DNA of 64,000 nt, from the IMG/VR virus record IMGVR_UViG_3300018891_000001, positions 124,001 through 188,000 of that record. The stretch is one strand, 5' to 3'. The notes below the pieces were generated by a model, which was given only the letters and a program-made list of their open reading frames with translations, was not told where the DNA came from and did not search any database. Shown in pieces: positions 13,700 to 24,451 of the stretch. Numbering within the stretch: position 1 is the first letter of the stretch; every line of letters begins with the position of its first letter. Position numbers and translations under genes: made by a program.

Positions 13700-14599
13700 A
13701 TGGAATTTAAGTTAGCAAACTTTCAAGTTAAAGAAGTCATCCCCGCTTCTGCCTATCGTGATGATTATGTTGATTGGGGATTAAAAGCAGTTGGTGCAGA
13801 AATTGCTTGGCAAAAATCCAAAGGAAGAGGCATTAAAGTAGCGGTTTTAGATACAGGCATTGACCGTGACCATCGTGATTTAATTCAAAATGTGAGAGAA
13901 ACGATTGATTTTACAGGATCTCCATACGGAGCTGAAGATGTACAGGGTCATGGTACCCATTGTGCAGGTATTATCGCCGGTGTAGATAATCAGATAGGCA
14001 TGATCGGGGTAGCACCGGAAGTGGAAATTTATTCAGCTAAAGTATTGGGAGATAACGGTTCCGGTAGTTTTGAATCTATTATCAAAGGAATTCGATGGGC
14101 AATGACACATAATGTAGATGTCATTTCCATGAGCTTGGGAACTGCGACTCGACCACCACAAATATTGCATGATACGATTAAGCAAGCTGTTGCACAAGGC
14201 ATTATCCTAGTTGCCGCTACAGGGAATGAAAATAGTGCAGTATGTTATCCAGCAGCCTATGATGAAGTCATTGCCGTTTCTGCTGTAGACCAAAAACTAG
14301 AACGTGCTAAATTCTCTAACTTTGGTATTCAAAATGCGATTTCTGCACCAGGAGTGGATATTGTATCGACTTACAAAAATGGAACCTATGCCCGATTATC
14401 TGGCACTTCAATGGCCACTCCACTTGTAGCCGGTGCATGTGCCCTGATTATTGATCGATACAAGCAGCTTCATAACGGACTAAAGCCAAGCGTAGAGTAT
14501 GTGCATCAAACACTACTCACCATGGTCAAAGACTTAGGGGAAATAGGAAAAGATGAGCTATACGGAGCAGGAATGCTAAATTTGGCACTTCTTCCGTAA
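13700..14599 (+). CDS. Subtilisin-family (S8) serine protease, no signal peptide
   Basis: VAVLDTGID, HGTHCAG, AATGN, SGTSMATP. Confidence 0.93.
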   Translation: MEFKLANFQVKEVIPASAYRDDYVDWGLKAVGAEIAWQKSKGRGIKVAVLDTGIDRDHRDLIQNVRETIDFTGSPYGAEDVQGHGTHCAGIIAGVDNQIGMIGVAPEVEIYSAKVLGDNGSGSFESIIKGIRWAMTHNVDVISMSLGTATRPPQILHDTIKQAVAQGIILVAATGNENSAVCYPAAYDEVIAVSAVDQKLERAKFSNFGIQNAISAPGVDIVSTYKNGTYARLSGTSMATPLVAGACALIIDRYKQLHNGLKPSVEYVHQTLLTMVKDLGEIGKDELYGAGMLNLALLP

Positions 14600-18199: not shown

Positions 18200-19690
18200 A
18201 TGTGCCAAGGCATACACGTTCATGTACATAGTGAAGAAAGTTTGCTTGACGGATTATCAACTGTCAAACAGCTTGTTGCTAAAGCCAAAGCACTTGGACA
18301 TATTGCTTTAGGGCTTACCGATCATGGTGTGTGTGGAGCTATACCGGATTTTATTTCTGAGTGTCAGAAACAGGGTATTAAACCTATTCCGGGATGCGAG
18401 GTATACATGACCAAAAATCGTTTAATCAAAGGAAAAGAACTAGAAGAAATGCGTATCAAACTTTGCACCAAATACAAAATTACAGATCATAAAGGCAAGC
18501 CTAAGATGAAATTACTCCAAGATTTTCTTCGAAAAGTAGAAAAGAATTATGCTTGCTTTGAAGAAGAGGCTCGCATCCTATTAAAAGACTATCTCATGTC
18601 AAGTGACCCTGAACCCAAGGAGGAGTCACTTGATTTATTTTCCATCTATGAAATAGATTTTAATGAACCTCTAGAAGCGAAAAAAGCTCCCGATACTGTT
18701 GAAGAAAAAATAGAAGCTTTTAAAAAAGAAGTGTTTCACTACCTTGACTATGGTAATTTTCACATGGTGTTACTTGCCATGAATAATCAAGGACTGGAGG
18801 ATTTATATGAGATTGTTTCTGATGCTCATATTAATGGCTTCTATTCTGATCCTCGTACCGACCTTGATTTTATTCGAGAAAGAGGTCTGGGCAGGAATCT
18901 TATTGCTACTTCAGCCTGTCTTGGGAGTTATTTTAGTCAGCTCTGTTTGGCAGGAAGAATTGAAGAAGCGAAACAACATATTTTAGAATGCAAAGAAACC
19001 TTTGCACATTTTTATTTAGAAAAACAGGCTACCTCTATCCCCGAACAACTTTATATTAACCAAATCATTGATCAATTAGCCGTTGAAACCAATACACCGA
19101 AAATTCTCACCACAGACGTACACTATGCCAATAAAGAAGACAATCACATTCATGATATCCTTGTTACATCTTCTATTGGTAAGTGTATCTCTGATGAAAA
19201 CCGTATGAAATACGCCCATGAATTCTGGATGAAAAATGACGAAGAAATGATGGAAAAATGTTACGATCCAGAAGCATGGGGGAATACACTAAAAATTGCT
19301 GAAATGGTCAATGTTTCCTTACCGAAGGAGCCATTATTTCCAAAATTCTTGATTGAAGGAAATGAAACGGCTGATGAACTATTGAGAAAGAAAGCATGGA
19401 ACGGTTTATTCGAAATGGCATTAACCGAAGATATTGATATTCAAGAATACTCTCGAAGACTCCAATATGAACTGGATGTTATTTGTACAGAAGGATTTTC
19501 AGATTATTTCTTGATTACCGAAGATAAAATGAGAGCCACAAATGAAGCCGGCTTTTTAACAGGTCCGGGGCGTGGTTCGGGTGCAGGCTCACTCGTATGT
19601 CGATGCCTCAAAATTACTGCACTGGATCCGATTAAAGAAAACCTACTATTTGAGCGTTTCCTAAATCCAGAACGTGCTGGATATCCTGAT
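18200..19690 (+). CDS. dnaE: DNA polymerase III alpha, exon 1 (PHP domain and start of polymerase domain)
   Basis: HVHSEESLLDG, TDHG, SACLGS, GPGRGSGAGSLV, FERFLNPERAGYPD; the join 18200-19690 + 21004-21683 + 23092-24451 is 3531 nt and in frame. Confidence 0.9.
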
Positions 19691-21003
19691 TGGCTAACAA
19701 AATTTGTAGCGTAATGCATTTCATTTTCCTATCAATAATGATACAATAGATATAGATTATTGATAGGAGGAAGCAATAATGGGGAAACTTTATACGTATG
19801 ATATTATCTGTGAAACATGTGGAGAAACTGTAACTGTTACACGTTCAAGAAAAAATTCGAGATATTGCTCTAAATCGTGTGCATCCAAAGCGCCTCGAAA
19901 ATACAAAAACATCAACGAACAAGAAATTATTGATATGTATCAAAACGGATTATCCTTACAAAAGATTGAACAACAAACAAGCATCAAGATAGAGAAAATA
20001 AGAAAGATCATTCATCAAATAGGAATTATGAGAAGCAATAAAGAAAACTCTCGCAAATATCATATTAATCATGATTATTTTGAAACGATTGATACTGAAC
20101 ACAAAGCATATTGGCTTGGATTTATATATGCTGATGGATATATTGCAAAAAGAAAGGGTAATCAAAAATGCATCGGTATTGCATTATCAAGAAAAGATGA
20201 AGATCATATAAAAAATTTCTTGTTCGACGTTGATTCTAATTATGTAATTAGACAGTATACAGGAACAACTCCAGATGGAAAAGATTTTGAATATTCAAGA
20301 GTGATTATTACATCTGATAAAATGTTCGATGATTTATTGAATAAAGGAGTTGTCGAACACAAAACATTGGTTCTTCAATTTCCTTCATTCGAAATTGTCC
20401 CAAAAACTTTAATGCATCATTTTATCAGAGGATACTTTGATGGTGATGGATCATTCTCAAAATGCATAGAAGGATATACTCTTCCATATAAAGTGAGAAT
20501 CTGTGGAACAAAAGAGTTTCTTCAAGGCATTGAGAATTTTATTGGAATCAAAGGGAATTACAGTAAACGTCATAAAGATGATAAGAATAATTGGACATTA
20601 GAATACTCCAATAAAGAAGATATCCTTCAATTTGCTAATACCATTTACGAATATTGCACAATCTGCTTAAACAGAAAATATCAACGCTACAAAGAAATGT
20701 TGGATCAGTCGTCCTAATAAGAAACTATTAGGATTATCACTCGGTGAATTGCTGGAAACTCCTTAGAGCCTTATACACCACAACGTAGTTGGAAACGACA
20801 AGCGTGATGGTTTGAAAAGTATAAGGATTGGACAATCAGCAGCCAAGCTCCTAAGTCACAAGATATGGAGAAGGTTCAACGACCATCCCGTGGGAGGGAG
20901 TAGGGCAAATGCCCGAAGTGCCGAGCACCCAAACCGTTAAGGTCGGTGGGTGAAGATATGGTCTATTCCCTATACAAATATGTCGAAAGACAGGGTATCA
21001 AAG
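19691..21003 (+). mobile_element. Group I intron 1 in dnaE, HEG in P1 loop
   Basis: Core motifs gaattgctggaaac, aatcagcagccaag, gttcaacgacca, aagatatggtcta; ends in G; removal restores PD|LDIDY; the U.G register at the 5' site is not clean, so the boundary may be off by 1. Confidence 0.85.
19779..20717 (+). CDS. Intron-encoded LAGLIDADG homing endonuclease with N-terminal Zn finger and HTH
   Basis: YWLGFIYADG and FIRGYFDGDG; CETCG...YCSKSC. Confidence 0.9.
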   Translation: MGKLYTYDIICETCGETVTVTRSRKNSRYCSKSCASKAPRKYKNINEQEIIDMYQNGLSLQKIEQQTSIKIEKIRKIIHQIGIMRSNKENSRKYHINHDYFETIDTEHKAYWLGFIYADGYIAKRKGNQKCIGIALSRKDEDHIKNFLFDVDSNYVIRQYTGTTPDGKDFEYSRVIITSDKMFDDLLNKGVVEHKTLVLQFPSFEIVPKTLMHHFIRGYFDGDGSFSKCIEGYTLPYKVRICGTKEFLQGIENFIGIKGNYSKRHKDDKNNWTLEYSNKEDILQFANTIYEYCTICLNRKYQRYKEMLDQSS

Positions 21004-21683
21004 CTCGATATTGATTACTCATATGATGGAGCACGATGGGTACAAATGTACTTAAAAGAAAAATACGGGCATGATAAAGTTGCACAAATTGGAACCAAAG
21101 GAACGTTAGCAGCAAGAGCCGTCATCCGTCGTGTCGGAAAAACATTAGGATTAGAAAACGCCACAGTGGATGCTTTTGCAAAATCGATTCCTTCCCGTCC
21201 TGGTATTACATTAAATGAGGCTTATGCTGAAGAACCAATGGTACAGCAATATGCACAAACTTATCCGCAGTGGTGGGAAGCGGCAAAAGCATTAGAAGGT
21301 CATATTAGTCAAGTCGGAGTTCATGCCGGAGGAATTGTCTTATCTCCTGTTCCTCTCACCAAAGTCACTCCACTTCGCTTGGATAGTGAAGGACTTGAAA
21401 CAACCCAATATGATATGAAGTGGATTGAAAAATTCCTCGTCAAATTTGATATTTTAAAACTCGATACGCTGGACTTGATTAAAAAGACGATGGAGTTTGC
21501 AGGTATTTGGGGAACGATGGATCCGTATCGAGATATTGATGTTAATGATCCAAACATCTATAAAAATGTGTATAATCAACTCAATTTATCTGGTATCTTC
21601 CAGTGTGAATCCGATCTGTTTCGAAAAATTATTAATGATATGAAACCCAACTCTTTTGCTGATATTTCGGTTATTGTTGCCCT
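21004..21683 (+). CDS. dnaE: DNA polymerase III alpha, exon 2
   Basis: LDIDYS, VAQIGT, GVHAGGIVLS, LVKFDILKL, GIFQCES. Confidence 0.9.
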
Positions 21684-23091
21684 TAACTAATCCGGTCAAT
21701 CGGGGGCAACATTAAAAAAGCGGGTTATATGCTGGAACACCCTAAAGCCTACGGTACGCATAGCGTAACAATCCGTATGGATGTAACAATGGGCAACCAG
21801 CAGGGAAGGGTAGCTCGAAACCCACCCTCAGAGACTGGGAGAATATCTCCGCTTATGGAAGGTAACGACCATAAGCAACCCCGCTAGGATTGCTGTGAAG
21901 CAAACCGAATGATACAGTCCGACCTCTAGTGAAAGCTAGAGAGCTAGGCAGAAATGACCTAGCCATTATGACAAACAGGTTGACAACATATGAATTAATT
22001 CAAGGCGCTTATAAGGAGTCCAATATGGAATAGCAAGGTATTTGTAACCATGTTGCAGCAACAATTCCTTTTTAATCTGATCACGTTGTTGAATTTTTAA
22101 CAAGTCATCTTCACCGTTAGGATGATATTTCTCATACAAGTGGTAATGTTGCTCACCATGGTATTCAACACAAAGCTTATATTCTTCATAAAAAGCATCC
22201 ACATAAAGATGTTTACCAGTTGCAGAATTAATCAAGAAATCAAAAGTCTTTTCAGTAACCATTGGTGTATCTAAAATAGATGAAATCATTTTAAAGTAAT
22301 ATTGAGCAGTTCGATTTTCCTTTGTATAGTTTGCAGGAACACCGGCAAGCTCACACGCTTTGACAAATCCGAATCGGCGTTTATAAGTTTCACTAGAAAA
22401 CTTCGATTCAGCATCCACTAATGATTGAGATACAAAACCAAAATCGTTGTAAAGATTTCTTAATTCTTGCAGCAATTCCTCATCTGGTATGTTTTGTGGA
22501 TTTGCAATTGAACAACCTGCTTTTTCAAAAGCATTGTTCCATGATTTGAATAAACGATAAATAACATTTTGCGAATATTTACCTTGCTTTAAATAAAGCT
22601 CCTTAGTAATGCGACCATTAGTTTGAAAGACTGATTGAATATCAGCAATTACTTCATCTTCTGTGTAAATCGTTTTTTTACAAGCACTTGCAGGATTTTG
22701 TTGATCACTAATTGGAACACCGGCTTCACTATAAGCTAAATACACAGAAGCAAATTCTCTTTTAAAAGTATCGTATTTCCATTTTCCATAAGTATTAATA
22801 ATAGCTTGAGTGACCTTGCCATGTTCCTTATATAATCGTTGAATTTCAGTAATCAATGATTCACGAGTAGGTTTAATATCTTCTCCTGTAAGAGCTTTAG
22901 TAAAATGAGAAATGCCACCAAACTTTTTAAGTTGATAATACGTGTAACGAGAATGATTCATATAAATCTGTTTGGTGACTTTCCCGTATTCTTTGTAAAG
23001 TCTTTCAAAATCATTTAATAATTGCTCATATGTTACGTCCATATATAATTCCTCCTTAAAAGAACCTGTTTGTTATATTGTAACATAAAAG
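21684..23091 (+). mobile_element. Group I intron 2 in dnaE, with antisense HEG
   Basis: P1 gttgccct/ggggcaac with U.G; P10 atcg/cggt; tatatgctggaac, aaccagcagg, ctcagagact, aatgatacagtcc; terminal G 23091; removal restores AL|GRPGP. Confidence 0.9.
21966..23042 (-). CDS. Putative homing endonuclease: helical repeats plus Vsr/DUF559-like PD-(D/E)XK domain, antisense to its intron
   Basis: Repeated E....I..L....GK.T....Y units; LYVDAFYEEYKLCVEYHGEQHY...RDQIKKE; RBS aaggagg. Confidence 0.75.
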   Translation of the reverse strand: MDVTYEQLLNDFERLYKEYGKVTKQIYMNHSRYTYYQLKKFGGISHFTKALTGEDIKPTRESLITEIQRLYKEHGKVTQAIINTYGKWKYDTFKREFASVYLAYSEAGVPISDQQNPASACKKTIYTEDEVIADIQSVFQTNGRITKELYLKQGKYSQNVIYRLFKSWNNAFEKAGCSIANPQNIPDEELLQELRNLYNDFGFVSQSLVDAESKFSSETYKRRFGFVKACELAGVPANYTKENRTAQYYFKMISSILDTPMVTEKTFDFLINSATGKHLYVDAFYEEYKLCVEYHGEQHYHLYEKYHPNGEDDLLKIQQRDQIKKELLLQHGYKYLAIPYWTPYKRLELIHMLSTCLS

Positions 23092-24451
23092 CGGTAGACC
23101 AGGACCTTTAGATCTAATTCCTACATATGTTGCTCGCAAATGGGGAAGAGAAAAAGTCACTTATCCATTTCTAGAGTTAGCACCAGTACTTGAAGAAACA
23201 TATGGAGTTTGGGTATATCAGGAGCAGCTTATGAGAGCTTCACAGATTTTAGGTGGACTGACACTAGGACAAGCTGACATGATTCGTAAGGGAGTTGCTA
23301 AGAAAAAATTTGATTTAATGAACCGATGGATTGATCTCATGATTTACGGCAGCGAGGAGTATAAACGTCGTCATGCTCAATTAGTCAATCAATATCCGTT
23401 AGATGCGGAAGGAAAATCCACCGTACCACTTAACGAAGAAGGAAAACCTGCCTTATGGGTCGATTATGAGTACGAGCAAGTTCCTGATGTAGAAGGGGCC
23501 ATTGCTCGTGGATTTGATGAACCAACCTTGCTCAAAATTAAAGCCGACTGGATTAAGTTCGGTAATTACTGTTTCAATAAAGCCCACTCAGCGGCATATG
23601 CCTTTTTATCATGCATTACCGCATGGTTAAAATGCTACTATCCTGTTGAATTTATGGCTGCTTTATTAACCATGGCAGAAGGAAAGAAAGATAAAAACGG
23701 AAATCCAAAAACCATTCACTACATGAAAGAATGTGAAGAAATGGGAATCCGTATTTTGTCTCCTGATATTAATCAATCCATGTCTGGCTGGACTCCAATT
23801 TCCTATAATGAGATCCAATACGATAATCAGAATCGACCATGTATCGGTGAAATTCGCTATGGTCTAGCAAGTATTGGCGGTGTAAGTGAAGAATCTGTTG
23901 TAGAAATTATTTTGCGTCGTTCGTATTCTTCCTTAGAAGATTTTATTGCCAAAGTCAACAGCACAAAAGTGAATAAAACCAAAGTAATAGCCTTAATTAA
24001 AGCGGGTTGTTTTGATTCCTTCACTCCTAATCGTAATCTTCTTCTTCGTAACTATTATCGATCCCGTGGTGAAGAGTATGAGCATATCCCAACAACTACA
24101 AACAAAGCTACTATTCTTTCTTACGAGCGAGAAGTTTTCGGGACAGCCATTAGTATTCGTTCTCGATGGGAAAAAATCGAAGAAGGAGCTCAAACTCAAC
24201 TCACCGGTCATATTAATGAAATCGAATCCTGGAGAGCGAAAACAGGAAAAACCCATTTTACATTGGTGGTTGAAACACAGGAAGAACCAATCTTCGTTAC
24301 GGTATGGGGTTATTTAATGGAAAAATATAAAAATGAACTTCAAATTGGAAACAAAGTCACCATTAAAGGGGAAAAATCGAAAAACAAGCTGATTGCAAAA
24401 ACCGTCCAACAACACGCCAATATGTATGAAGTAGATTTGCCTTCAGCATAG
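23092..24451 (+). CDS. dnaE: DNA polymerase III alpha, exon 3
   Basis: GRPGP, YGVWVYQEQLM, YCFNKAHSAAY, YYPVEFMAALL, OB fold at the C-terminus. Confidence 0.9.

What the first reader, a model, noticed from the sequence alone, without database searches (positions are those of the whole stretch)
21966..23091. Endonuclease gene inserted antisense within a group I intron
Seen: a 358-aa ORF on the strand opposite dnaE and its intron, with its own RBS (aaggagg) and TG-T-TACAAT promoter near the 3' splice site. It is bracketed by a 13/14 inverted repeat (atgacaaacaggtt 21968-21981 and aacctgtttgttat 23063-23076) that would close it off as a loop after the P9 region. Established: phage intron HEGs are normally in the sense orientation. 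Inference: an independent invasion whose transcript is antisense to dnaE pre-mRNA and could modulate splicing or polymerase levels. The nuclease class (repeat array plus Vsr-like domain) differs from the LAGLIDADG genes.
Basis: partly seen in the sequence, partly recalled or inferred. Interest (0 to 1): 0.65.

Follow-up and report, generated by a model that had tools for sequence, protein, structure and literature searches.

The report
Backwards homing-endonuclease gene inside phage intron
A self-splicing intron in a giant phage's DNA polymerase gene carries a selfish nuclease gene written on the opposite strand, tucked into one hairpin loop; relatives show that this loop takes such genes in either direction, which is unusual for phage introns but not a new kind of element.

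Summary
A 1,408-nt group I intron (21684-23091, +) splits dnaE inside the conserved AL|GRPGP finger motif. Its ribozyme core fills the first ~280 nt.

A 358-aa ORF (21966-23042, -) lies in the loop of a 16/18-bp helix (21964-81 / 23063-80). This helix is the intron subfamily's P9.2 hairpin. In 107 of 122 relatives sharing the 25-nt P9.1 motif it is a ~17-nt hairpin followed by GTAACA and the 3' splice site.

The protein has four HNH_repeat (HTH-like) modules plus a Vsr-fold nuclease, like I-Bth0305I/DUF559. Against an 80%-identical relative that also carries it antisense, dN/dS is 0.08. A third relative has deleted it but kept the stem.

Among the 10 ORF-bearing subfamily members, 5 HEGs are sense and 5 antisense, from two nuclease families. 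Four of the five antisense cassettes carry a TGnTAyAAT -10 and an AGGAGG site.

Independent invasion of a peripheral loop is therefore well supported. Transcription of the ORF, nuclease activity and any antisense control of splicing remain untested, because no RNA data hold this locus. I rate it a new variant of a known kind, of moderate interest.

The parts
21684..23091 (+). Group I intron 2 of dnaE (1,408 nt). The 5' splice site follows U21683 and the omega-G is G23091. Splicing gives ...VIVAL|GRPGPLDLIP.
   Evidence: Rfam RF00028 at 51.5 bits. There is no start codon in the conserved frame 23084-23230, so exon 3 must be joined by splicing. Uninterrupted Moorella phage DnaE reads AAAALVRPGPLG. 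L014 has an ORF-less intron of the same subfamily at the same AL|YRPGP codon phase.
21672..21711 (+). P1 and the internal guide. Exon-2 end 21675-21683 pairs with 21703-21711 (U21683.G21703 wobble at the splice site). The adjacent guide bases 21694-21702 can pair with the exon-3 start 23092-23100 (P10, 8 of 9 pairs).
   Evidence: Duplex energies are -15.5 (P1) and about -10 to -11 kcal/mol (P10). The exon-3 start ranks among the best 6 of 1,450 positions tested. P1 was also found as inverted repeat I22.
21684..21941 (+). Ribozyme core, P1 to P9.
   Evidence: Rfam alignment covers model positions 1-253. It is 95.7% identical to L003, against 72-75% for the flanking exons.
21940..21964 (+). Conserved 25-nt P9.1 motif (hairpin 21943-48 / 21958-63) that defines the intron subfamily.
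   Evidence: Exact-pattern scans found 19 viral, 63 metagenome and 49 genome loci.
21964..21981 (+). 5' arm of the P9.2 helix. It overlaps the HEG stop codon (21966-68) and its last codons.
   Evidence: KKP_3916 has an equivalent arm of unrelated sequence at the same position. L003 and L059 keep the pairing through C/U changes.
23063..23080 (+). 3' arm of the P9.2 helix.
23080..23091 (+). Conserved 3' element GTAACA (23080-85), then the tail TAAAAG ending in omega-G.
   Evidence: 101 of 107 ORF-less subfamily members have GTAACA directly after the P9.2 hairpin.
21966..23042 (-). Homing endonuclease gene, 358 aa, antisense to dnaE.
   Evidence: dN/dS is 0.084 and dS 1.42 against L003, with no indels. 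It is the only credible minus-strand gene in the plus-strand block 1-34.8 kb. GC is 0.31-0.34 against 0.36-0.42 in the exons.
22338..23042 (-). N-terminal DNA-binding region (aa 1-235): four HNH_repeat three-helix modules.
   Evidence: PF18780 at 97.9 bits with 4 stretches. The modelled units superpose on TetR-type HTH domains at Z 5-6, which is weak for helical units.
21969..22292 (-). C-terminal Vsr-fold nuclease domain (aa 251-358). Invariant residues include D282, E293, H299 and D321.
   Evidence: AF2 model with pLDDT 76. VIA-align gives Z 8.1 to Vsr 1cw0_A, Z 7.0 to I-Bth0305I 3r3p_B and Z 6.0 to the DUF559 protein 3hrl. Foldseek probability is 0.97-0.99 for Vsr. DUF559 matches two relatives at E 1e-4.
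23051..23057 (-). Shine-Dalgarno AAGGAGG, 8 nt upstream of the ATG.
   Evidence: Sequence. Conserved in L003.
23077..23085 (-). Putative extended -10 promoter TGTTACAAT. It is the reverse complement of ATT plus the conserved intron element GTAACA.
   Evidence: Identical in L003. The antisense cassettes of L023 and L036 have TGCTATAAT and TGGTATAAT. Function was not tested.
20986..21683 (+). dnaE exon 2 (NTPase domain end and finger positions 20-73). The start coordinate is approximate.
   Evidence: Pfam; intron 1 core ends near 20985.
23092..24451 (+). dnaE exon 3 (rest of the finger domain, HHH_6, OB).
   Evidence: Pfam; sequence.

Best explanation
A mobile group I intron interrupts the phage's dnaE at the codon for the conserved AL|GRPGP finger motif.

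The ribozyme is complete within the first ~280 nt. Its peripheral P9.2 hairpin, normally about 17 nt, has been expanded by a 1.08-kb insert. The insert is a self-contained expression cassette on the opposite strand: an extended -10 promoter, an AAGGAGG site and a 358-aa ORF. The 16/18-bp P9.2 stem closes the insert off and brings the GTAACA element and omega-G back to the core, so the intron can still splice.

The protein is a homing endonuclease with four HTH-like repeat modules for DNA recognition and a Vsr-fold (EDxHD/DUF559-type) nuclease. It most likely cuts intron-less dnaE alleles of co-infecting relatives near the insertion site and is copied in with the intron by break repair.

Shown: gene order, the helix, the splice junction model, the fold class, purifying selection, presence/absence polymorphism of the HEG, and recurrence of both orientations in this loop.

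Inferred: promoter use, nuclease activity and target, and the idea that the antisense orientation is tolerated or favoured because it uncouples HEG expression from dnaE transcription and keeps ribosomes off the ribozyme.
For: Intron and junction:
- Rfam core match.
- P1 with a U.G wobble and a contiguous P10 guide.
- No start codon for the conserved beginning of exon 3.
- Uninterrupted homologues read AL-x-RPGP.
- L014 has the same subfamily intron, ORF-less, at the same codon phase.

P9.2 identity:
- 96 distinct P9.2 segments in 107 ORF-less members. 88 of 96 fold as hairpins, with median z -4.5. 101 of 107 are followed by GTAACA.
- KKP_3916 has a 12-bp stem of unrelated sequence at the same place, enclosing a homologous HEG.
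- The helix appears in the whole-intron MFE.

HEG reality:
- PF18780 x4 and a Vsr fold at Z 8.1 / 7.0.
- dN/dS 0.084 over dS 1.42 with no indels.

Mobility of the HEG apart from the ribozyme:
- L059 keeps the intron, the stem and about 120 nt of the HEG 3' end but lacks 972 nt.
- One contig in another study skips 22023-23044 (weak).
- 5 sense and 5 antisense HEGs from two nuclease families occupy this loop.
- The closest bacterial homologue shows no intron nearby.

Expression signals:
- TGnTAyAAT plus AGGAGG occur in 4 of 5 antisense cassettes.
- In the window the same 9-mer sits 32-40 nt upstream of four same-strand starts, including the LAGLIDADG HEG of intron 1.
Against: - There is no transcript evidence; no RNA run holds the locus.
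- The -10 has no -35 and the pattern is not enriched window-wide.
- No terminator is predicted after the ORF.
- The window's own nuclease domain does not reach any Pfam or NCBIfam threshold. It has H where relatives have D in the E-x-D-G-x-x-H motif, so activity is not assured.
- The Rfam score is only just above gathering (51.5 against 50).
- The structural matches rest on a model built from three sequences (pLDDT 76), and Z 7-8 is near the tool's stated background for best hits.
Confidence: 0.78

Rival explanations
1. Regulatory antisense reading. The minus-strand HEG transcript, or its read-through into the complement of the ribozyme core, pairs with dnaE pre-mRNA. This tunes splicing or polymerase level, so the orientation is functional for the phage and not just tolerated.
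For: - The HEG is head-on to a 35-kb plus-strand block.
- No terminator follows the ORF, so read-through into the P9/P7 complement is possible.
- The antisense arrangement persisted over dS of about 1.4 and recurs in other lineages.
- There is a precedent for an antisense RNA linking a phage intron-bearing gene to a HEG: Millard et al. 2010, cited in PMC3428280.
Against: - There are no expression data.
- L059, and possibly the X6 contig, lost the HEG and its start region without losing the intron. Any regulatory role is therefore dispensable.
- Sense and antisense forms are equally frequent, as expected if orientation is neutral.
Confidence: 0.12
2. The protein is no longer a homing nuclease. 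It would be a domesticated or degenerate derivative, for example a DNA-binding or splicing-helper protein, or a nuclease used in competition between phages rather than in homing.
For: - There is a D-to-H change at position 295 of the E-x-D-G-x-x-H motif in both the window and L003.
- The window's own nuclease domain has no family-threshold hit.
- Strong purifying selection is more than the homing cycle alone predicts for a fixed HEG.
Against: - D282, E293, H299 and D321 are invariant across the four aligned relatives.
- The Vsr fold is retained.
- HEG loss in L059 is the pattern expected for a selfish HEG.
Confidence: 0.08
3. The ORF is a free-standing gene between two separately translated dnaE fragments. 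Under this reading the intron ends at G21941 and dnaE is a split gene, so the ORF is not in an intron at all.
For: The Rfam model is matched end to end within 21674-21941 and ends on a G.
Against: - Splicing at 21941 would give AL followed by a stop codon.
- 46 conserved codons (23093-23230) have no start codon.
- The subfamily's P9.1, P9.2 and GTAACA elements all lie beyond model position 253 in ORF-less members too.
- P10 pairing fits 23092.
Confidence: 0.02

Closest known systems
I-Bth0305I and the EDxHD (Vsr-like) homing endonuclease family; Bacillus phage 0305phi8-36 recA intron (PMC3239194)
   Same: A phage group I intron in a DNA-metabolism gene. The architecture is an N-terminal repeated HTH-like DNA-binding region plus a C-terminal Vsr-fold nuclease. 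The model superposes on 3r3p_B at Z 7.0 over 85 of 98 residues.
   Different: I-Bth0305I is sense-oriented and interrupts P5. It has two NUMOD-2 motifs rather than four PF18780 repeats. There is no sequence-level match. The motif here is of the DUF559 type (E-x-[DH]-G-x-x-H).
dnaE intron 2 of Alicyclobacillus phage KKP_3916 (OQ846916)
   Same: Same host gene and same intron subfamily (72.7% identity over the P7-P9.1 region). The HEG is in the P9.2 loop, closed by a stem and followed by GTAACA. It belongs to the same HEG family (30.7% identity over 97%, E 3e-40) and has its own TGGTATAAT upstream.
   Different: Its HEG is in the sense orientation. The insertion site is the NTPase/finger boundary (DFLG|LKT), not AL|GRPGP.
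I-DirII in the Didymium iridis nuclear rDNA group I intron (Johansen et al. 2006, as described in PMC3073962)
   Same: A HEG encoded on the strand opposite the intron and its host gene, expressed from its own promoter.
   Different: It is eukaryotic, with a Pol II promoter, a spliceosomal intron and poly(A). The host gene is rRNA. From my own knowledge, not checked here, the nuclease family also differs (His-Cys box).
T4 td / I-TevI and other T-even intron HEGs (PMC2988022)
   Same: The HEG sits in a peripheral loop of a phage group I intron with its own promoter(s), and its expression is separated from that of the host gene.
   Different: They are sense-oriented and GIY-YIG or HNH.
Cyanophage S-PM2 psbA intron, F-CphI and the antisense RNA CfrI (Millard et al. 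2010, cited in PMC3428280; details from my own knowledge)
   Same: Antisense transcription across a phage intron-bearing gene, linked to a homing endonuclease.
   Different: There the HEG is free-standing and downstream, and the antisense RNA is non-coding.

Membership tests
Group I intron (Rfam RF00028) | Covariance-model score at or above the gathering threshold | tested here: met
   51.5 bits against 50, E 5e-11, model positions 1-253. The margin is narrow.
Group I intron (Rfam RF00028) | P1 with a U.G wobble at the 5' splice site, omega-G at the 3' end, and a P10 guide contiguous with P1 | tested here: met
   U21683.G21703; G23091; 21694-21702 pairs with 23092-23100 at 8 of 9 positions.
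Group I intron (Rfam RF00028) | Excision restores the host reading frame and conserved protein sequence | tested here: met
   AL|GRPGPLD matches AL-V-RPGPLG in Moorella phage and AL|YRPGPLD in L014.
Group I intron (Rfam RF00028) | Self-splicing activity | not testable with these tools
   Needs in vitro transcription with GTP, or RT-PCR.
PF18780 HNH_repeat (homing endonuclease associated repeat) | Pfam score above the gathering cut-off | tested here: met
   97.9 bits against 26, four stretches.
EDxHD / Vsr-like homing endonucleases (I-Bth0305I) | Vsr-type nuclease fold in the C-terminal domain | tested here: met
   Z 8.1 to 1cw0_A (98 residues, rmsd 3.5) and Z 7.0 to 3r3p_B. Foldseek probability is 0.85-0.99. 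This is based on a pLDDT-76 model.
EDxHD / Vsr-like homing endonucleases (I-Bth0305I) | Composite catalytic residues E, D, H, D conserved | tested here: inconclusive
   E264, D282, E293, H299 and D321 are invariant in four relatives. No residue-by-residue superposition on 3r3p or 1vsr was available. Position 295 is H here and D in relatives.
EDxHD / Vsr-like homing endonucleases (I-Bth0305I) | Detectable sequence homology to family members | tested here: not met
   phmmer and profile searches of PDB sequences found no Vsr or 3r3p match. I therefore call it 'Vsr-fold, EDxHD-like', not a proven member.
DUF559 (PF04480) | Pfam score above the cut-off | tested here: inconclusive
   The window protein has no hit. 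P0003 scores 22.1 bits (cut-off 20.6), and two of the four aligned relatives match DUF559 at best E 1.2e-4.
Homing endonuclease (functional class) | Encoded within a self-splicing element, with presence/absence polymorphism among related hosts | tested here: met
   Present in the window and L003. Deleted in L059 with a remnant left.
Homing endonuclease (functional class) | Cleaves the intron-less allele near the insertion site | not testable with these tools
   Needs a cleavage assay.
Antisense intronic HEG (as I-DirII) | HEG on the strand opposite the ribozyme | tested here: met
Antisense intronic HEG (as I-DirII) | Own promoter and demonstrated antisense transcript | not testable with these tools
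   Only a consensus -10 was found. No RNA run holds the locus.

The most novel reading that the evidence does not exclude
The P9.2 loop of this widespread phage and Bacillota intron subfamily is a two-way landing pad. Antisense HEG cassettes with their own extended -10 promoters have been acquired, or flipped across the stem's inverted repeat, several separate times. On this reading the orientation is kept because it solves the known clash between translating an intron ORF and folding the ribozyme. Alternatively, the antisense transcript gives the selfish element a handle on splicing of an essential polymerase gene.
Probability: 0.2. Interest if true: 0.75.

Novelty: new variant of a known kind. 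Interest (0 to 1): 0.55.

Why it matters
Phage group I introns are the textbook case of ribozyme-HEG partnership, and their HEGs are described as sense-strand ORFs in peripheral loops. The 2014 review of bacterial group I introns never mentions antisense or orientation.

This locus and its subfamily give a natural, comparative series in one hairpin loop: 107 ORF-less copies, 5 sense, 5 antisense and at least one HEG-deleted remnant.

That series makes three long-standing ideas directly testable:
- HEGs invade introns as independent cassettes.
- Translation of intron ORFs conflicts with splicing.
- Antisense transcription can couple a selfish gene to its host gene's expression.

It also adds a well-defined architecture (PF18780 repeats plus a Vsr-fold nuclease) to the small EDxHD-like class of homing enzymes.

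Tried and rejected
Searches that led nowhere:
- The search for related loci with the single protein found no viral relatives.
- megablast and blastn of the locus against phage records gave only short core matches.
- PDB sequence searches found nothing, or only spurious designed-repeat hits.
- NCBIfam gave nothing.
- The region-limited homologue search of aa 240-358 found only the protein itself and L003's copy.
- The sigma-70 scan did not flag the antisense -10 and found no terminator.
- TGNTAYAAT is not enriched window-wide.
- No RNA-seq run holds the locus. The one run guessed to be RNA covers only 21607-21768 at 94% identity, so transcription could not be checked.
- The ~306-nt extra insertion in exon 3 of L003/L059 matches no Rfam family.

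Readings rejected:
- The split-gene reading, with the intron ending at 21941. The reasons are given under the rival explanations.
- Treating the inverted repeat as transposon-like ends. It sits exactly where the subfamily's P9.2 hairpin lies.

Not done:
Exon 2 was searched by reference, and exon 3 was only scanned and read in place.
- The large representative-protein search, the atlas search and complex prediction were not needed.
Full report
**Setting.** The window is bases 124001-188000 of a 215,870-bp virus record with direct terminal repeats. Public runs place it in biocrust metagenomes. All credible genes from 1 to about 34.8 kb are on the + strand, except the ORF in question.

The dnaE gene (PolIII alpha) is in three pieces. 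These are 18200-19714 (PHP and start of the NTPase domain), about 20986-21683 (rest of the NTPase domain, finger positions 20-73) and 23092-24451 (rest of the finger, HHH_6, OB). Rfam finds two group I intron cores on the + strand: 20689-20985 at 86.3 bits and 21674-21941 at 51.5 bits, against a gathering score of 50. Intron 1 carries a sense LAGLIDADG gene (19779-20717). Intron 2 is the subject here.

**The observation.** The inverted repeat extends to 18 nt at 89% complementarity (21964-81 / 23063-80).

**Intron boundaries.** P1 pairs exon bases 21675-21683 with 21703-21711, with the U21683.G21703 wobble at the splice site. The guide bases immediately upstream (21694-21702) pair with 23092-23100 at 8 of 9 positions, forming P10. 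The exon-3 start ranks in the top 6 of 1,450 positions for this pairing.

G23091 is the omega-G. The frame 23084-23230 encodes 46 conserved DnaE residues but has no start codon, so it must be joined by splicing. The product reads ...VIVAL|GRPGPLDLIP. An uninterrupted Moorella phage DnaE reads AAAALVRPGPLG and KKP_3916 reads AMNRPAIL. Locus L014 has an ORF-less intron of the same subfamily at the same codon phase, giving AL|YRPGPLD. I compared exons one at a time by reference.

**What the inverted repeat is.** The best phage relative is Alicyclobacillus phage KKP_3916. Its dnaE also has a LAGLIDADG intron and a second intron. That second intron's P7-P9 region and a following 19-nt hairpin are 72.7% identical to ours.

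I scanned three public collections with the shared 25-nt motif (21940-21964). This gave 131 loci, which with the window, L001 and L003 made 136 occurrences, 122 of them unique. In 107 of these the motif is followed by a short variable segment and then GTAACA (101 of 107). There are 96 distinct segments with a median length of 17 nt. 88 of the 96 fold as hairpins of 4 bp or more, with median z -4.5. So there is a conserved position for a hairpin of free sequence, which I call P9.2. It is followed by GTAACA, a few bases, and the 3' splice site.

In the window the order is the same: P9.1 motif, AT, stem arm, 1,081-nt loop, stem arm, GTAACA, TAAAAG, exon. KKP_3916 has a 12-bp stem of completely different sequence at the same place.

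**The protein.** There are four PF18780 HNH_repeat units (E 4e-28). PHROGs annotated as HNH, homing or intron-encoded nuclease cover the C-terminus.

An AlphaFold model from a three-sequence alignment (pLDDT 76) shows four three-helix modules and an alpha/beta domain at aa 251-358. VIA-align ranks Vsr first (1cw0_A, Z 8.1, 98 residues), the I-Bth0305I catalytic domain second (3r3p_B, Z 7.0) and a DUF559 protein seventh (3hrl, Z 6.0). Foldseek gives probability 0.97-0.99 for Vsr. These Z values are only at the level the tool calls typical for best hits. They are convincing mainly because the top matches form one coherent family and two relatives hit DUF559 by sequence at E 1e-4.

D282, E293, H299 and D321 are invariant in four relatives. 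Position 295 is H here and in L003, and D elsewhere. There is no sequence-level link to I-Bth0305I. I call it Vsr-fold and EDxHD-like, not a proven family member. The repeat modules resemble TetR-type HTH domains at Z 5-6, which is weak evidence.

**Is it a living gene, and is the arrangement stable?** L003 is a 6.8-kb metagenome contig carrying the same split dnaE, the same intron at the same site, and the same ORF on the opposite strand. The proteins are 80% identical, both 358 aa, with dN 0.12, dS 1.42 and dN/dS 0.084. The ribozyme core is 95.7% identical, while the exons are 72-75% and the HEG 78% at the DNA level. The antisense arrangement therefore predates the split of these phages, and the ORF is under strong purifying selection.

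L059, a third relative, keeps the intron, the stem and the last ~120 nt of the HEG. It lacks the 972 nt that hold the rest of the gene, its start and its ribosome site. One short contig from an unrelated study skips 22023-23044. That joint has only 31 letters on its shorter side and I treat it as weak. This is the presence/decay pattern expected of a homing endonuclease gene.

**Orientation in the subfamily.** Ten unique copies have a long P9.2 loop with an ORF.
- Sense: KKP_3916 and two introns in L016, all HNH_repeat plus the same nuclease motif. L016 matches our protein at E 1e-30. Also L027 and L032, both LAGLIDADG_3.
- Antisense: the window and L003; L020 (LAGLIDADG_3, E 1.7e-5); L023 (zinc ribbon plus LAGLIDADG_1, E 1e-3, below the cut-off); and L036 (HTH plus LAGLIDADG_1, E 2e-3, below the cut-off).

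Rfam confirms the ribozyme strand in L016, L020, L023, L027 and L036. For L020, L023 and L036 I did not verify exon continuity. Orientation there rests on the ribozyme strand, the stem and GTAACA. The count is 5 sense to 5 antisense, across two nuclease families. Antisense HEGs are thus not a one-off in this subfamily.

**Expression signals.** Four of the five antisense cassettes have TGnTAyAAT 15-45 nt upstream of an AGGAGG site: the window and L003 (TGTTACAAT), L023 (TGCTATAAT) and L036 (TGGTATAAT). L020 has none obvious. The sense HEG of KKP_3916 also has TGGTATAAT.

In the window the 9-mer is not enriched overall (10 against 8.5 expected). But four of the ten matches sit 32-40 nt upstream of same-strand starts at 13700, 19779 (the intron-1 LAGLIDADG gene), 23042 and 53865.

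In the window and L003 the -10 is the reverse complement of ATT plus the conserved GTAACA. The intron's own 3' element thus supplies most of the promoter. No terminator is predicted after the ORF. No RNA run holds the locus, so all of this is consensus-level inference.

**Mechanism.** Most likely this is a selfish HEG cassette that entered the terminal loop of a peripheral hairpin. It either inserted backwards or was later flipped by recombination between the stem's inverted arms; I cannot tell which. There the stem isolates the cassette from the ribozyme.

Translation from exon 2 stops two codons into the intron (TAA at 21688-90). With the ORF antisense, no ribosome loads on the intron RNA, which would avoid the known clash between intron-ORF translation and splicing (established knowledge from T4 td/I-TevI; not tested here). 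The enzyme presumably cuts intron-less AL-x-RPGP alleles. That site is a recurrent home for this subfamily: the window, L003, L059 and L014 all carry the intron there.

Loss of the HEG in L059 shows it is dispensable.

**What is known.** Antisense HEGs with their own promoters are documented in nuclear rDNA group I introns (I-DirII; PMC3073962). The EDxHD family is documented in a phage recA intron, sense-oriented, in P5 (PMC3239194). Several full-text searches for antisense or opposite-strand HEGs in phage or bacterial group I introns found none. The 2014 review of bacterial group I introns contains no mention of antisense, opposite or orientation. The library is incomplete, so absence there is not proof of novelty.

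**Verdict.** The feature is real and well explained. It is a new variant of a known kind. Interest is moderate, and is raised by the finding that one hairpin loop of a widespread intron subfamily accepts HEGs in both directions about equally often.

Noticed in passing
window 19715-20985 (intron 1); L003 5660-5974: Intron 1 of dnaE carries a sense LAGLIDADG gene (19779-20717) near its 5' end, with TGATACAAT 32 nt upstream of its start. The relative L003 has the same intron core (88% identical) but no ORF: about 26 nt stand where the window has about 1 kb. This is a second HEG presence/absence polymorphism in the same gene.
   Followed up: partly
L003 3102-3407 (minus strand); L059 (reverse-complement coordinates 694-994); equivalent to the point after window 23214: L003 and L059 have an extra ~300-nt non-coding insertion in exon 3 at the TYG(V/I)W|V...YQEQ site, which the window lacks. 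It matches no Rfam family even in a small-region scan. It may be an unrecognised intron type.
   Followed up: partly
L014 12020-13400: Another dnaE has an ORF-less intron of the same subfamily at the same AL|YRPGP site. About 47 codons later an intein-like insertion begins (CLAEGT...) with LAGLIDADG-like motifs. It sits at the TFGV|C position, the same spot where L003/L059 have their extra insertion. This short stretch of the finger domain looks like a hot spot for mobile elements.
   Followed up: partly
L004 5001-6104 (Psychrobacillus sp. FJAT-21963, LJIY01000009): The closest bacterial homologue of the HEG (46% identity, with the canonical EYDGPQH motif) shows no group I intron or obviously split host gene nearby. 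It seems to be free-standing among unannotated ORFs.
   Followed up: partly
Read laying X1 record 2 (18-kb contig) over window 21909-21964: The source sample holds a second, ORF-less member of the same intron subfamily on a different contig (P9.2 hairpin, then AGTAACA). More than one copy of this intron type therefore circulates in the same community.
   Followed up: no
Genome-contig loci L089-L137: The exact 25-nt P9.1 motif occurs in 49 species-representative genomes, mostly Bacillaceae and Anoxybacillaceae (Neobacillus, Geobacillus, Anoxybacillus) plus some Actinomycetota and Chloroflexi MAGs. In several, the sequence after the intron looks like 23S rRNA (L033, L108) or one recurring conserved gene. 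Host genes were not catalogued.
   Followed up: no
Foldseek hits 9i05, 9g6k, 6z1p, 9gek: The whole-protein model's top Foldseek hits are chains of Toxoplasma and Tetrahymena mitoribosome structures. Human FASTKD4 (FAST1-FAST2-RAP module) appears in the VIA-align list. If these share the helical-repeat-plus-RAP/Vsr-like layout of FASTK proteins (my reading, not checked), the HEG has the same overall plan, which may or may not reflect common descent.
   Followed up: no
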